Virus record (IMG/VR): IMGVR_UViG_3300033233_000001
Span: 62,001 to 126,000 of that record
DNA length: 64,000 nucleotides
Strand: one strand, 5' to 3'
The position numbers were made by a program, and so were the translations under genes. Below are positions 51,856-62,684 of this stretch, in pieces (position 1 is the first letter of the stretch; every line of letters starts with the position of its first letter). The notes under the pieces are model-generated. The model was given only the letters and a program-made list of their open reading frames with translations. It made no database searches and was not told the origin of the DNA.

Positions 51856-51875
51856 GTGTGTCGCAAGCCCTTGAC
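51856..51875. promoter_or_regulatory. bidirectional promoter box GTGTGTCGCAAGCCCTTGAC
   Basis: identical 20-mer at 57938; TTGAC -35 on plus and TTGCGA -35 on minus. Confidence 0.75.
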
Positions 51876-51905
51876 CGTCGCGCTGGCCTCGGGCACCGTC
51901 TGCCC

Positions 51906-54569
51906 GTGGGCGCGACCTTCGACTTCCTCCGCCGAGACGCGGCGGCCGGCTGCTATCACGTCGAGAATCCTCTCGGACTCGACGTGCGCCTCTTCGCGAA
52001 CGCCGAGGTCCACTTCGAGAAGTCGGCGTTCCAGCAACTGTTCGACTTCCTCGACGTCTCGCGTGCGGTGAGCGATCTGCGCGAGGCCGAAGCCGCTGGA
52101 CGCGTTTCGTTCTTCGGGGACGCCCCGGCCGGCATCGACAAGGTCGTGCTCACGCCGGACTTCCACAAGGGCTCGCTGGTCCCCGTCGGCACGGTCGCGC
52201 GTGCCCAGCATTTCTGCATCCCCCAAGCGATCGGGAACGACATCTGCTGCGGCATGCGGTTGCTCGTGACTGACCTGCCGGCCGAGGCGCTCGACCCGTA
52301 CTGGCCGGAGATCCAGAAGCGGCTTCGGGCGATCTTCTTCGCGGGCGAGCGAAACATCCCGATGTCGCCGCGGCAGCGCGAGGCGGTCCTGCGCGATGGT
52401 CTGCCGGGACTGCTGCGCACGGCGGGGGACAACGAGAAGACGGGCATCTGGACGCGCTTCGATCCTGTTGCCGAGAGGGAGAATCTTTCGCGCGCGCATG
52501 ACGAGGGGCACTTCGAGACGCGGCGCCTGTTTGGGTTCGAGAGCTTCATCGAGGCCAGTGGGCGCGTCGATGGGCGCGACCCGCAGATCGGCTGCGTCGG
52601 CGGAGGCAACCACTTCGTCGAGCTTCAGCGGATCGACGCTCTCTTCGACGGGCACGCTGCGCGCGCGTGGGGCATGTCGAAGGGGTGCTTGGCCATCATG
52701 GTGCATTCGGGGTCGGTCGGGCTCGGGCACGCGATCGGCGGGCACTTCATGGGCCGTGCGCACGAGATCTTCCCGACGATCGTGAAGGCTCCGGCTGGCG
52801 GCTTCTATCCGCTGCCGACGAGCGGGCCGCGAGCGGAAGAGGGTCTGTTCTATCTCGACGGCATGGGCAACGCGGCGAACTTCGCGTTCGCGAACCGGCT
52901 GTTCCTCGGCCTCATGGCGGTGCGCGCGATCGAAGAAGCATCCGGACGTACGCTATCGACCAAGCTCGTCTACGACGCGCCGCACAACCTCGTGTTCCGT
53001 ACCGGCGACTCGATGCTGCACCGCAAGGGCGCGACGCCTGCGTACGGGCCGAGCGGCGACGACTACCATGGACGGCCATGTCTAATCCCAGGCTGTTTCG
53101 CTGCGGGCACGCGGATCCTGATGGCCAACGGCCACTACGAGAGCATCGAGAACATTCATCCTGGGGACCGAGTGATTGACGGTGCCGGTAACCCGGCAGC
53201 AGTCCGAAATATTCTACGACGCGGCCGTCGAGACGTATGGCGATACAGAAACAACAACTGGTTCGCCGACACAGTCGCCACGCCGGATCACCTACATTTC
53301 GTTGGCGACTTCTCTTCGACGCCTAATGCGCAGTCAGTCGCAGGACGTTTTAAGCCTGATGGTCGCCGGTCATACTCGTTCACCAGAACAGCAGTATTGG
53401 ACCGGCGGACTAAGAGCGGGGAGAGCAAGTACGCATGGCGGCGTCTCGACGAGTTACCGAAGCGCTGTTACAGCTACGTGCTTCTCATGCCTCGACGCAT
53501 CAACTTCGTCGGCATGAAGCGGACATTCGTTGAATACCGCGAAGGATGGGCGTTGACGCCTAGCTACGATTTGGGATACGTGCTCGGTCTATTCGTGGCA
53601 GACGGCACGACGTACTACAAGCCGGCCGACGGAGGCCAAGTCACCTGGGCGCTTGCCCTGGACCAAGATGAGATGGCTGCAAAACTATCGGCTGCGCTGA
53701 TGTCGATCTTTGCAGTTAAGACGAAACTGTATCGAACGAAAAACGTGCTGCTCGTCGTCGTGCATAATGTTCGTCTTGCGCGGTTGTTCTTGGATTTCGG
53801 CAAGAAGCGCACGAAGGCTCTTCCGGGCCACTTTTGGTGCAAACAGAGGGCGTACACGCGCGGAGTCTACGACGGCCTTTACGATGGCGACGGGCACTTC
53901 AACGCAGGATCGAAGAAAATCACGAATACGTCGGTCGCGTGTATTGAGCAGTTCATGATCATTCATCATCTGCTTTTCGGATATCTGCCGTCGATTAGCG
54001 TGCGCCCGCCGTCTGCCGGCGGCCTTGCGGAGCGCGGGTGTGACGTAAAGCGCTGCGGTCCATCTTACCGGGCGACCTCTCTCGGCAAACCTCCTTTGTC
54101 TAGGCTGTATCAGCTGATCGAGATGAGGCGTGTAGACAGGAAAAAGCGCAGCGCGTTGGTGTACGATCTCGAACTCGATGGGCCCGAGCCGAGTTTCATC
54201 GCGAACAACGCGATCGTGCACAACTCGATGGGAGCAGCCAGCTACGTACTTGCCGGACAGGGACGCGAGGATGCGTTGGAGAGCGCGTGCCACGGTGCGG
54301 GCCGAGCGCTGTCGCGCGGGAAGGCCACGCACGTCGACAGGGACGTGTACGAGCGGGAGATCGGCAAGCTCCGCGTGGTCGGGCCGATCGACCCGCGCTC
54401 GCCGCGGATCGCACGGCGACGTGACATCGTCGAGGCCTACGAGAAGCGGCTGATGGAAGAAGCTCCGTACGCGTACAAGGCGGTCGAGCCCGTCGTCGAT
54501 TCCGTCGAGGACGCGCAGATCGCACGCAAGGTCGCGCGGCTCATGCCGCTCTGCACGGTGAAGGGTTGA
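51906..54569 (+). CDS. rtcB: RtcB RNA ligase (3'-phosphate/5'-OH) containing an intein
   Basis: PDFHKG, DICCG, GGGNHF, HSGS, HN, HRKGA, IPG/SMG, CHGAGR, EEAPYAYK, terminal KG; likely GTG start 6 nt after the -10 box. Confidence 0.93.
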   Translation: MGATFDFLRRDAAAGCYHVENPLGLDVRLFANAEVHFEKSAFQQLFDFLDVSRAVSDLREAEAAGRVSFFGDAPAGIDKVVLTPDFHKGSLVPVGTVARAQHFCIPQAIGNDICCGMRLLVTDLPAEALDPYWPEIQKRLRAIFFAGERNIPMSPRQREAVLRDGLPGLLRTAGDNEKTGIWTRFDPVAERENLSRAHDEGHFETRRLFGFESFIEASGRVDGRDPQIGCVGGGNHFVELQRIDALFDGHAARAWGMSKGCLAIMVHSGSVGLGHAIGGHFMGRAHEIFPTIVKAPAGGFYPLPTSGPRAEEGLFYLDGMGNAANFAFANRLFLGLMAVRAIEEASGRTLSTKLVYDAPHNLVFRTGDSMLHRKGATPAYGPSGDDYHGRPCLIPGCFAAGTRILMANGHYESIENIHPGDRVIDGAGNPAAVRNILRRGRRDVWRYRNNNWFADTVATPDHLHFVGDFSSTPNAQSVAGRFKPDGRRSYSFTRTAVLDRRTKSGESKYAWRRLDELPKRCYSYVLLMPRRINFVGMKRTFVEYREGWALTPSYDLGYVLGLFVADGTTYYKPADGGQVTWALALDQDEMAAKLSAALMSIFAVKTKLYRTKNVLLVVVHNVRLARLFLDFGKKRTKALPGHFWCKQRAYTRGVYDGLYDGDGHFNAGSKKITNTSVACIEQFMIIHHLLFGYLPSISVRPPSAGGLAERGCDVKRCGPSYRATSLGKPPLSRLYQLIEMRRVDRKKRSALVYDLELDGPEPSFIANNAIVHNSMGAASYVLAGQGREDALESACHGAGRALSRGKATHVDRDVYEREIGKLRVVGPIDPRSPRIARRRDIVEAYEKRLMEEAPYAYKAVEPVVDSVEDAQIARKVARLMPLCTVKG
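53094..54224 (+). mobile_element. intein (377 aa) with LAGLIDADG endonuclease in RtcB
   Basis: LIPG|CFAAGT...TPDH...LGLFVADG, DGLYDGDG...IVHN|SMG. Confidence 0.95.
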
Positions 54570-54585
54570 CCTCGTACCTCGTGGC

Positions 54586-54629
54586 GTGTGTCGGAAGCTC
54601 TTGACTGTCGGACAGGACGTGCCCAGAGT
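54586..54629 (+). promoter_or_regulatory. promoter box variant GTGTGTCGGAAGCTCTTGAC, TTGACT-N17-CAGAGT
   Basis: 18/20 match to the boxes at 51856 and 57938. Confidence 0.65.
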
Positions 54630-61968: not shown

Positions 61969-62000
61969 GGATATGGGATTCTTCTTCTCGGTTCAGTAGT

Positions 62001-62639
62001 TCAGGAACTTGAATAGTTGTCCGAGGCAGTGCCCTGTTCCGGCAAGCTCTTGAGCGCGCACAGACGGCACGTAGCCAGGATGGCCGCCGTGCCAGAAGTT
62101 GACGTGATGCCCGAAGGCCGCGATGAAACCGTCCTTGAAGGCGTGGTGCTCTCGATAGCGAACCCAGTCGCGCGCTCAGAGTATCCGCCCCACTCGTTCT
62201 TCGGCTCCTGCGGCACGAAACTGTTGTCGTGGTAGAGCGGCCTGCCAGCAATGCGCTCGAACAGGTTGAGGTACGCAGCGTGACAGCCGTGATCGACGGC
62301 GGGGTCAGCGACGCGCGTGGTCTTGGGCCAGACGTGAACGCTCATCCAGGGGGCGGCGAGGATGCGTTGAAGCTGCTGGAACTTCTCCTCGAACTCGGCG
62401 TTCGTCTCGGTCGTCGCCCACTTGTAGCAGGAACCGTTGGGCCACGAGTACTGATGATGGAGCTTGAGCCCCACCGTACGCGCGGCGTTGTACGCGACGT
62501 TCTCGACGAGCGTCAGCAGCTTGTTCTCGGCGTCTTCGTCTACGGCCAGCTGCACGTGGATGCCGTCAGCAAGCGAGCCGAATCCGCGCGGCGCTGACTG
62601 GTAGCGGAATTGGATCGAGAAGTATTCCACGCTGCGCAT
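62001..62639 (-). CDS. hypothetical protein
   Basis: promoter box variant upstream; lower GC. Confidence 0.6.
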   Translation of the reverse strand: MRSVEYFSIQFRYQSAPRGFGSLADGIHVQLAVDEDAENKLLTLVENVAYNAARTVGLKLHHQYSWPNGSCYKWATTETNAEFEEKFQQLQRILAAPWMSVHVWPKTTRVADPAVDHGCHAAYLNLFERIAGRPLYHDNSFVPQEPKNEWGGYSERATGFAIESTTPSRTVSSRPSGITSTSGTAAILATCRLCALKSLPEQGTASDNYSSS

Positions 62640-62662
62640 TTGTACCCGGTGTCGGACATGCC

Positions 62663-62684
62663 GTCAAGAGAGCTTGCGACACGC
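62663..62684 (-). promoter_or_regulatory. promoter box variant GCGTGTCGCAAGCTCTCTTGAC
   Basis: reverse-strand copy of the 51856/57938 box with a 2-nt longer linker. Confidence 0.6.

What the first reader, a model, noticed from the sequence alone, without database searches (positions are those of the whole stretch)
51856..62684. Shared bidirectional promoter box links rtcB, vWA-purA and the PTH2/tRNA unit into a putative RNA-repair regulon
Seen: GTGTGTCGCAAGCCCTTGAC is identical at 51856 and 57938, with variants at 54586 and 62663(-); TGTCGCAAGC also occurs near 51207. The box holds back-to-back -35 hexamers (TTGAC on plus, TTGCGA on minus). At 51856 and 57938 both have a -10-like box 17 bp away, and three of those four promoters have a start codon 6 nt later. 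These leaders lack the ACAY hairpin, so they form a second promoter class. Inference: co-regulation of RNA ligase, PurA-like enzyme, hydrolase and suppressor tRNA as an anti-defence or translation-repair kit.
Basis: partly seen in the sequence, partly recalled or inferred. Interest (0 to 1): 0.65.

Follow-up and report, generated by a model that had tools for sequence, protein, structure and literature searches.

The report
Genome-wide 13-base phage promoter/operator box
The repeated box is real and sits in back-to-back promoters, but it is one of about 25 copies of a 13-base control element spread over a 298-kb uncultured jumbo phage, so it marks a broad phage gene-control circuit and not a dedicated RNA-repair regulon.

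Summary
The 20-mer is identical at 51856 and 57938, with variants at 54586, 62672(-) and 51204. At both exact copies each strand has a -35-like hexamer, a 17-nt spacer and a -10-like hexamer. Three of the four promoters reach a start codon 6 nt later.

The 20-mer is composite: a sharply bounded 13-mer, GTGTGTCGNAAGC, then 2 nt, then a TTGAC -35. The window lies in a 297,749-bp, 65% GC virus record from a sediment metagenome. The 13-mer occurs 29 times there (reversed control 1). About 25 copies are intergenic, and its core is the most intergenic-enriched 8-mer in the genome.

Its position relative to host-type promoter hexamers varies, and no second conserved block lies within 50 nt. In 10 orthologous sites of related phages it is 94% identical, against 36-44% in the flanks. 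The boxes before rtcB, p304-purA and p148-PTH2-tRNA are all kept.

Best reading: an operator for a phage-encoded DNA-binding protein, similar in behaviour to mycobacteriophage stoperators, although no gp71 homologue is present. The neighbouring genes are diverse, so a specific RNA-repair regulon is only partly supported. No RNA data exist.

The parts
51856..51868 (+). 13-mer element GTGTGTCGCAAGC (box 1). Its reverse complement contains TTGCGA.
51871..51899 (+). Rightward promoter TTGACC-17-CACCGT. The GTG start of rtcB follows 6 nt later at 51906 (leaderless).
   Evidence: In relative L040 the -35, the -10 (CACCAT), the 6-nt gap and the GTG are all conserved.
51838..51866 (-). Leftward promoter TTGCGA-17-TACGAT. 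A GTG start follows 6 nt later at 51831.
   Evidence: The relative has TTACGA-16-TAGCTA at the same place (read).
51619..51831 (-). 70-aa gene of unknown function, leaderless, divergent from rtcB.
   Evidence: 66% identity to the relative over residues 31-68
51906..54569 (+). RtcB-family RNA ligase interrupted by an intein (Hint plus LAGLIDADG, about residues 397-770).
   Evidence: The relative's RtcB lacks the intein.
54586..54598 (+). 13-mer GTGTGTCGGAAGC (box 2), 17 nt after the rtcB stop codon.
54601..54629 (+). Promoter TTGACT-17-CAGAGT with the palindrome TGTCGGACA (54606-54614) in its spacer. A short leader with GAGAGG precedes ATG 54655.
   Evidence: The module is conserved in relative L048.
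54655..56942 (+). p304 (54655-55569; phrog_2971, vWA-like fold as a lead) and PurA-like adenylosuccinate synthetase (55581-56942).
   Evidence: The pair is also found in cluster C mycobacteriophages.
57938..57950 (+). 13-mer GTGTGTCGCAAGC (box 3).
57953..57981 (+). Rightward promoter TTGACT-17-TAGAGT.
   Evidence: The relative has TTGACA-17-TAGCTT.
57920..57948 (-). Leftward promoter TTGCGA-17-TACCGT. ATG 57913 follows 6 nt later.
57167..57913 (-). 248-aa gene of unknown function, leaderless. No relatives were found.
57992..58935 (+). Transcription unit behind box 3: 4-codon mini-ORF ending in TAG (57992-58006), conserved leader of about 100 nt, p148 (58092-58538), PTH2-like hydrolase (58535-58860) and tRNA with anticodon CUA (58861-58935).
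62672..62684 (-). 13-mer variant GCGTGTCGCAAGC (box 4).
62639..62667 (-). Promoter TTGACG-17-TACAAA with the palindrome TGTCCGACA (62650-62658) in its spacer. It drives the 212-aa gene 62001-62639. The in-frame GTG at 62630 lies 8 nt after the -10.
51204..51216 (+). 13-mer variant GTATGTCGCAAGC (box 0). On the minus strand TTGCGA-17-TACAAG precedes ATG 51174 of the 282-aa gene 50326-51174. An overlapping double half-palindrome lies at 51236-51251.
   Evidence: The element, the spacing and the double half-palindrome are conserved in relative L040. The -10 lacks T at position 6.
31177..31189 (-). Another copy of the 13-mer in the window, followed by TTGTCT-17-TAGTGT with the palindrome TGTCTGACA. 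It lies directly downstream of the HTH_17 gene 31291-31554(-), a candidate binder.
   Evidence: The gene-plus-site arrangement is conserved in relative G001.

Best explanation
The 20-mer is a composite. It is a stand-alone 13-bp asymmetric element, GTGTGTCGNAAGC, placed 2 nt upstream of the -35 hexamer (TTGAC) of a promoter read by the host's primary-sigma RNA polymerase. The reverse complement of the element (GCTTNCGACACAC) contains a second -35-like hexamer, TTGCGA, which serves a divergent leaderless promoter at the two exact copies.

Shown: the element is sharply bounded, genome-wide (about 25 intergenic copies) and conserved in related phages while its flanks diverge. It also takes many different positions relative to promoter hexamers: upstream of the -35, as the -35, across the spacer and -10, and at the -10 and +1.

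Inferred: it is the operator of a phage-encoded sequence-specific DNA-binding protein, probably one that binds as a monomer or asymmetrically. Candidates are the two small HTH_17 proteins, each of which lies beside a copy. Where the bound protein overlaps core promoter elements it would block RNA polymerase. Where it lies just upstream of TTGAC (centre about -44) it would spare or stimulate the promoter. At boxes 51856 and 57938 this would act as a toggle: the leftward leaderless genes go off while rtcB and p148-PTH2-tRNA stay on or go up.

A second operator, the palindrome TGTCNGACA (28 copies, probably bound by a dimeric Xre-type protein), adds further control at boxes 54586 and 62672.

rtcB, p304-purA and PTH2-tRNA therefore belong to one large phage regulon of at least 25 promoters, not to a dedicated RNA-repair regulon.
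For: Copy number: 29 copies at <=1 mismatch against 1 in the reversed control, and about 25 are intergenic after inspection. GTGTGTCG is the top intergenic-enriched 8-mer: 22 of 34 copies lie in the 11.8% of the genome that is non-coding, p 5e-13.

Boundaries: information content falls to background outside positions 1-13, and no second conserved block lies within +-50 nt.

Variable register (read):
- TTGAC at +2 to +4 at most of 10 sites (TTGTC at two, +15 at one).
- TTGCGA-17-TAnnnT at 51856 and 57938.
- TTGACN, 9 nt, then the element, whose CAYACT serves as the -10, at genome positions 155571, 195849, 196524 and 284306.
- TAGCTT -10 overlapping the 5' end of the element at genome positions 139053, 262486 and 15078.
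- The element filling the spacer at genome positions 273076 and 141098.
- TAGAGT overlapping its start at genome position 56061, conserved in G001.

Directionality: a TTGAC-type hexamer after the element (TTGAC at +2 to +4 at most sites) is present at 10 of 10 sites with a gene in that direction and at 0 of 10 sites with a gene only in the other direction.

Footprint: 10 orthologous pairs show 94% identity in the element against 36-44% in the flanks.

The relative keeps the 57938-type box although the upstream genes there are co-directional and no divergent gene exists. The element is therefore not conserved merely as a divergent -35.

No sigma region 2, T7-type polymerase or Rpb1/Rpb2 domains are found in the genome, which fits dependence on the host polymerase.

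Both HTH_17 genes lie within about 120 nt of a copy, and one such arrangement is conserved in G001.

The palindrome lies within about 40 nt of 7 of the 25 elements, against about 0.2 expected.
Against: There is no binding or expression data. The only sequencing run that holds this DNA is the source DNA metagenome. Promoter calls are by pattern, and a strict consensus scan supports only one of them. Several -10 hexamers are weak (CACCGT, TACAAA, TAGACC). Gene starts come from a simple self-trained caller. The strict 2-nt spacing to TTGAC at most of these sites would also fit an activator, or a promoter element contacted by the polymerase itself. The sites in relatives were partly found by searching for the motif, which inflates the footprint. 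The binder is not identified, and no homologue of the L5 repressor exists.
Confidence: 0.55

Rival explanations
1. The box is nothing more than two back-to-back host-type promoters. On this reading the 13-mer is conserved only because it carries the TTGCGA -35 and favourable flanking context for the host polymerase, and no dedicated binding protein exists.
For: TTGCGA-17-TAnnnT with leaderless starts at 51856 and 57938. The same geometry is conserved at 51204 and before the rtcB-divergent gene in the relative. Leaderless primary-sigma promoters are common in high-GC Actinobacteria (general knowledge).
Against: Only about 4 of 25 copies have a -10-like hexamer 16-18 nt after TTGCGA. Positions 1-6 (GTGTGT), outside the hexamer, are as invariant as the hexamer itself. 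Seven copies point TTGCGA into the 3' end of an upstream gene. The relative keeps the box where there is no divergent gene.
Confidence: 0.15
2. The reverse complement GCTTNCGACACAC is a single-block promoter for a phage-encoded polymerase or sigma-like factor, marking a middle or late gene class.
For: 18 of 25 copies have a gene downstream in that orientation, 9-77 nt away. The block is compact and invariant like single-block phage promoters. Many large proteins of this phage have no recognisable family, so a divergent polymerase cannot be excluded.
Against: No sigma region 2, T7-type or multisubunit polymerase domains were found. Seven copies would drive antisense transcription into the upstream gene. 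At four copies a TTGACN lies exactly 17 nt upstream of the CAYACT in the element, which is host-type geometry. The element lies upstream of the -35 at 10 sites.
Confidence: 0.1
3. One reading: the box defines a dedicated RNA-repair or translation-repair (anti-defence) regulon linking rtcB, vWA-purA and PTH2-tRNA.
For: All three units carry the box, and the relative keeps it at all three. A second RNA ligase (PF09414) at genome 269015-270115 also lies behind a copy.
Against: Most of the roughly 33 neighbouring genes are unrelated to RNA repair or are of unknown function: NUDIX, nucleotidyltransferase, HTH proteins, a GDSL-like protein and many without any family. The four boxes differ in their second operator and in directionality. 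No defence or anti-defence family matched.
Confidence: 0.07

Closest known systems
Operator and stoperator sites of the cluster A mycobacteriophage immunity repressor (L5 gp71, TipsytheTRex repressor)
   Same: Both are 13-bp asymmetric sites with more than twenty copies per genome. Both lie in promoters and in short intergenic spaces, and both contain a -35-like hexamer. Both phages depend on the host polymerase (PMC9283540). The host here appears to be actinobacterial, and integrase genes are present.
   Different: No gp71 homologue is present (tblastn E > 0.6, phmmer found nothing). Orientation does not follow the direction of transcription (10 sites against 7 among unidirectional contexts). 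Many copies sit at a fixed 2 nt upstream of a -35, and the genome is six times larger. Binding and silencing are untested.
Lambda OR region (divergent PR/PRM with shared CI operators)
   Same: Back-to-back divergent promoters share a protein-binding site. A site centred near -42 to -44 of one promoter overlaps the core of the other, so a single protein could switch between them.
   Different: Lambda operators are palindromic and occur in threes at one locus. Here a single asymmetric site is repeated at about 25 loci, 8 of them divergent. The toggle itself is inferred only.
T4 MotA box of middle promoters
   Same: A phage-specific conserved block replaces or accompanies the -35 region of host-polymerase promoters and defines a temporal class.
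   Different: The MotA box lies at a fixed position (-30) relative to the -10. Here no partner element lies at a fixed distance, and both orientations are used.
Start-associated sequences (SAS) of cluster K mycobacteriophages
   Same: A 13-bp asymmetric motif repeated in intergenic regions of an actinophage genome.
   Different: SAS lie at a fixed few bases upstream of start codons and include the ribosome-binding site. Here the distance to start codons ranges from 9 to more than 70 nt and no Shine-Dalgarno sequence is included.
Bacterial rtcBA RNA-repair operon under RtcR and sigma-54 (recalled from memory)
   Same: An rtcB gene under dedicated transcriptional control.
   Different: The promoter here is of the primary-sigma -35/-10 type with a leaderless start. 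Presence of rtcA, RtcR and a -24/-12 promoter was not tested. The control element is shared with many unrelated genes.

Membership tests
Bidirectional (back-to-back) primary-sigma promoter pair | -35-like and -10-like hexamers 16-18 nt apart on both strands, each leading to a gene | tested here: met
   Met at boxes 51856 and 57938. It is not met at boxes 54586 and 62672, which have a gene on one side only.
Bidirectional (back-to-back) primary-sigma promoter pair | Mapped transcription starts on both strands | not testable with these tools
   No RNA run holds this DNA.
Cluster A-type operator/stoperator system | 13-bp asymmetric site, more than 20 copies, in promoters and short intergenic spaces | tested here: met
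   29 copies at <=1 mismatch, about 25 of them intergenic; the 13 positions are sharply bounded and only weakly self-complementary.
Cluster A-type operator/stoperator system | Site orientation correlates with the direction of transcription | tested here: not met
   Among sites between co-directional genes, 10 have one orientation and 7 the other; 8 more lie between divergent genes.
Cluster A-type operator/stoperator system | Repressor homologous to L5 gp71 (HTH plus stoperator domain) | tested here: not met
   tblastn of L5 gp71 against the whole genome gave a best E of 0.67, and phmmer against the predicted proteome found nothing. This test is by sequence only.
Cluster A-type operator/stoperator system | Repressor binding blocks initiation and elongation | not testable with these tools
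   Needs EMSA and reporter assays.
Promoter of a phage-encoded RNA polymerase or sigma factor | The genome encodes such a polymerase or sigma factor | tested here: not met
   PF04542, PF00940, PF00623 and PF00562 gave no match. The T7-type control search matched nothing in any control genome, so that one result is uninformative. Divergent polymerases could escape detection.
Promoter of a phage-encoded RNA polymerase or sigma factor | One orientation relative to downstream genes at all copies | tested here: not met
   7 of 25 copies would point into the upstream gene.
MotA-box-type middle promoter | Box at a fixed distance from a -10 element | tested here: not met
   No conserved column outside the 13-mer within +-50 nt.
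Dedicated RNA-repair regulon | The control element is restricted to, or enriched at, RNA-repair genes | tested here: not met
   Of about 33 flanking genes only RtcB, one RNA ligase and the PTH2-tRNA unit are RNA-related.

The most novel reading that the evidence does not exclude
A temperate jumbo phage clade has independently evolved a stoperator-like global silencing and switching system. In it one small asymmetric-site binder (an HTH_17/Xis-like protein, not a gp71 homologue) occupies about 25 sites. At the 8 divergent sites it acts as a lambda-OR-like toggle, turning one leaderless gene set off and the opposite set on (including rtcB and the PTH2 plus amber-suppressor tRNA unit). A second palindrome-binding repressor adds further control at a subset of sites.
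Probability: 0.2. Interest if true: 0.6.

Novelty: new member of a known kind. Interest (0 to 1): 0.4.

Why it matters
Transcription control in uncultured high-GC jumbo phages is essentially unknown. This work yields a concrete and testable regulatory vocabulary of three promoter or operator classes: the 13-mer, the palindrome TGTCNGACA, and the hairpin-leader promoters. That vocabulary can be used to divide a 298-kb genome of mostly unknown genes into co-regulated sets and to search for the binding proteins. It also corrects an attractive but too narrow functional story: shared boxes here do not imply a shared RNA-repair function.

Tried and rejected
- Expression data: the only run holding the region is the source DNA metagenome.
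- Close relatives in annotated phages: only distant cluster C mycobacteriophage matches to p304 and PurA were found.
- Relatives of p304 in IMG/VR are 41-45% identical and lack the motif.
- The 248-aa divergent gene has no relatives.
- G001 shares the motif and six orthologous sites but lacks the rtcB-purA region.
- Whole-genome counts in the 259-kb and 55-kb relatives were not possible because those records are not held.
- The scan of 185,579 species genomes for the 20-mer pattern gave four hits with no phage homology, so they are chance hits. No prophage or host was identified.
- L5 gp71 homologue: absent.
- A gene in relative L052 whose promoter carries two copies of the element (a possible autoregulated binder) has no orthologue in this genome.
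- Rfam finds only the tRNA in 50500-63500.
- PADLOC shows no defence family apart from the intein's endonuclease.
- PHROGs on ten proteins of the motif-free 205-248 kb block gave no functions, so I could not show that this block is structural or late.
- Leader folds before p148 are not more stable than shuffles (z about -0.9).
- No other genetic code was applied. Coding density is 89% under table 11, so the CUA tRNA gives no sign of recoding.

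
Full report
**Setting**

The window is bases 62001-126000 of a 297,749-bp linear virus record that CheckV rates about 90% complete. GC content is about 65%. The only sequencing run that holds the region is a sediment DNA metagenome, probably the source sample. The only similarity to annotated phages is a distant match of the p304 and PurA-like gene pair to cluster C mycobacteriophages. Gene calls outside the window come from my own self-trained codon-bias caller: 469 genes and 89% coding under table 11. 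They are approximate.

**The observation**

The 20-mer is identical at 51856 and 57938 and has a 2-mismatch copy at 54586; shuffles gave none. A minus-strand variant lies at 62672-62684, followed by a 4-nt gap and TTGACG. A further variant, GTATGTCGCAAGC, lies at 51204.

Base-by-base reading confirms the claimed geometry.
- Box 1, + strand: TTGACC, 17 nt, CACCGT, 6 nt, GTG 51906 (rtcB).
- Box 1, - strand: TTGCGA, 17 nt, TACGAT, 6 nt, GTG 51831.
- Box 3, + strand: TTGACT, 17 nt, TAGAGT.
- Box 3, - strand: TTGCGA, 17 nt, TACCGT, 6 nt, ATG 57913.

A strict E. coli-type consensus scan recognises only the 57953 promoter. The other promoter calls rest on repeated geometry, start-codon spacing and conservation.

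**What the box is made of**

Whole-genome scans show that the conserved unit is the 13-mer GTGTGTCGNAAGC.
- It has 29 copies at <=1 mismatch against 1 in the reversed control. About 25 are intergenic after inspection.
- Its core, GTGTGTCG, is the single most intergenic-enriched 8-mer: 22 of 34 copies lie in the 11.8% of the genome that is non-coding, p 5e-13.
- Information content drops to background immediately outside the 13 positions, and no second conserved column exists within 50 nt on either side.

A TTGAC-type hexamer (TTGAC at +2 to +4 at most sites, TTGTC at two, +15 at one) is present at all 10 copies that have a gene in that direction. It is absent at all 10 copies that have a gene only in the other direction. 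At 7 of the 10, a hexamer with A at position 2 and T at position 6 follows at 17-18 nt.

**Variable register**

Read in the other orientation (GCTTNCGACACAC), the element meets host-type promoter hexamers in several different ways.
- TTGCGA serves as the -35 at 51856 and 57938, and less convincingly at 51204 and genome 268969.
- TTGACN lies 9 nt upstream, so that CAYACT of the element is the -10 at exactly 17 nt. This occurs at genome positions 155571, 195849, 196524 and 284306.
- A TAGCTT -10 overlaps the 5' end of the element at genome positions 139053, 262486 and 15078.
- The element fills the spacer at genome positions 273076 and 141098.
- At genome position 56061 a TAGAGT -10 overlaps the start of the element in the forward orientation, and this is conserved in a relative.

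Among sites between co-directional genes the two orientations occur 10 and 7 times; 8 sites lie between divergent genes. An element that is invariant in sequence but variable in register and orientation relative to core promoter elements behaves like a protein operator, not like a core promoter element.

**Relatives**

Pattern scans recovered related uncultured phages.
- G001 (a 106,780-bp fragment) carries 7 copies against 3 in the control and six orthologous sites.
- Contigs Ga0265320_10000170 (L037, L040) and Ga0265318_10000751 (L048) carry orthologues of RtcB (80% identity, without the intein), p304 (55%), PurA-like (61%), p148 (61%) and PTH2 (69%).
- In these contigs the boxes before rtcB, after rtcB (leading to p304-purA), before p148 and at the 51204 position are all present. 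Their -35 and -10 hexamers and the rtcB leaderless GTG are kept, while the spacers have diverged.
- Over 10 orthologous pairs the 13-mer is 94% identical against 36% upstream and 44% downstream. Finding sites by motif search inflates this figure somewhat.
- In L048 the box before p148 is preceded by co-directional genes and has no divergent gene. The element is therefore not conserved merely as the -35 of a divergent promoter.

**A second operator**

The palindrome TGTCNGACA occurs 28 times against 1 in the control. It mostly lies in promoter spacers just after TTGAC, or just downstream of the -10. It lies within about 40 nt of 7 of the 25 13-mers, where about 0.2 would be expected. Boxes 54586 and 62672 carry it; boxes 51856 and 57938 do not. 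The four boxes of the finding therefore form two subtypes.

A third class also exists: TTGACA-16-TAnnnT followed by a hairpin with an ACAY loop.

**Who reads and binds it**

No sigma region 2, T7-type polymerase or Rpb1/Rpb2 domains were detected. Large unknown proteins have no solved relatives. The phage therefore probably uses the host polymerase, although a very divergent enzyme cannot be excluded.

Two tyrosine recombinase genes are present, which suggests a temperate or plasmid-like lifestyle. L5 gp71 has no homologue.

The only two HTH_17 (Xis/MerR-like) genes each lie beside a 13-mer. One has the element in its own promoter spacer. The other lies directly upstream of a copy, and that arrangement is conserved in G001.

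An Xre-like gene at genome 157973 has both the 13-mer and the palindrome upstream, and this is conserved in relative L041. These proteins are candidates, not findings.

**Mechanism I commit to (confidence 0.55)**

The 13-mer is an operator for a phage-encoded protein that binds asymmetrically.
- The protein would repress where the element overlaps core promoter elements.
- It would spare or stimulate the promoter where the element lies just upstream of TTGAC (centre about -44).
- At the two exact boxes this gives a toggle between the leftward leaderless genes and rtcB or p148-PTH2-tRNA.

The genome-wide distribution, the sharp boundaries, the footprint in relatives and the variable register are shown. 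Binding, the sign of regulation and the identity of the binder are inferred.

**Comparison with known systems**

The closest known system is the operator/stoperator network of cluster A mycobacteriophages: 13-bp asymmetric sites, more than 20 per genome, in promoters and short intergenic spaces, bound by a monomeric two-domain repressor (PMC9283540). The site architecture matches. The orientation rule and the repressor homology do not. I therefore say the element may work like a stoperator system but is not a member of that family.

Lambda OR is the closest analogue for the divergent toggle. The MotA box and single-block phage promoters fail the fixed-distance and single-orientation tests.

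**The regulon claim**

The gene identities hold.
- RtcB family with an intein.
- PurA-like, which is neither a PurA equivalog nor PurZ by the NCBIfam cut-offs.
- PTH2-like (Pfam E 3e-11).
- tRNA with a CUA anticodon.
- p304 with a vWA-like predicted fold, as a lead only.

The other box-linked genes include NUDIX, an AbiEii/MNT-like nucleotidyltransferase, a second RNA ligase, HTH proteins and many proteins without any family. No defence-related family matched. Co-regulation of the three units is plausible; a dedicated RNA-repair regulon is not supported.

**Limits**

There are no transcript data and no binding data. Gene calls are approximate. The host is unknown. Whole-genome comparison with the largest relative was not possible.

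Noticed in passing
window 25309-25643 (-); also genome 131193-131376 (+), outside the window: Two CRISPR-like arrays. Each has a 36-nt direct repeat with unique 37-39-nt spacers; there are 5 and 3 repeats. Both arrays have an identical leader of about 70 nt, and the last repeat of array 1 is degenerate. The adjacent 1095-aa ORF (window 25842-29129, -) is a UvrD-like helicase with an intein, not a Cas effector. One spacer has a partial 20/21-nt match to a related phage contig (L037/L043), which is weak.
   Followed up: partly
window 51906-54569 (+); window 25842-29129 (-); genome 275662-279630 (+): Three intein-bearing genes with Hint and/or LAGLIDADG domains: RtcB, a UvrD-like helicase and a ResIII/SNF2-type helicase. 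The related phage's RtcB lacks the intein.
   Followed up: partly
window 57992-58091 (+): A 4-codon mini-ORF (ATG AYC TGG NNN TAG) lies right after the box-3 promoter and is conserved in relative L048. Conserved leader blocks follow, in which CCUCC can pair with the GGAG ribosome-binding site of p148. This lies upstream of PTH2 and an amber-suppressor-type tRNA. The folds are not more stable than shuffles.
   Followed up: partly
whole genome; in the window e.g. 8625, 8657, 12761, 12793, 54606, 60006, 62650, 63345: The palindrome TGTCNGACA occurs 28 times (control 1), mostly in promoter spacers or just downstream of the -10. It sometimes occurs in pairs about 32 nt apart, as expected of a repressor operator.
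   Followed up: partly
window 2799(-), 3159(+), 4106(+), 36638(-), 38996(-); genome 254063, 254569, 295865: A strong promoter class: TTGACA-16-TAnnnT with a TTTGTTG-type upstream tract, followed by a leader hairpin whose loop reads (A/G)AACAY.
   Followed up: no
window 63847-64908 (+); genome 26949-27932 (-): Two tyrosine recombinase/integrase genes (Pfam PF00589, E 2e-28 and 3e-10), which hint at a temperate or plasmid-like jumbo phage.
   Followed up: no
genome 269015-270115 (+) (L021:1015-2115): A second RNA ligase (PF09414, E 1e-30) lies behind a copy of the 13-mer. Other box-linked genes include NUDIX (genome 144678-145094) and an AbiEii/MNT-like nucleotidyltransferase (genome 195879-196499).
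   Followed up: no
genome 205140-248571 (-): A 58-gene single-strand block has no intergenic copy of either motif. Its proteins match almost no PHROG or Pfam family, so the clade is very divergent.
   Followed up: partly
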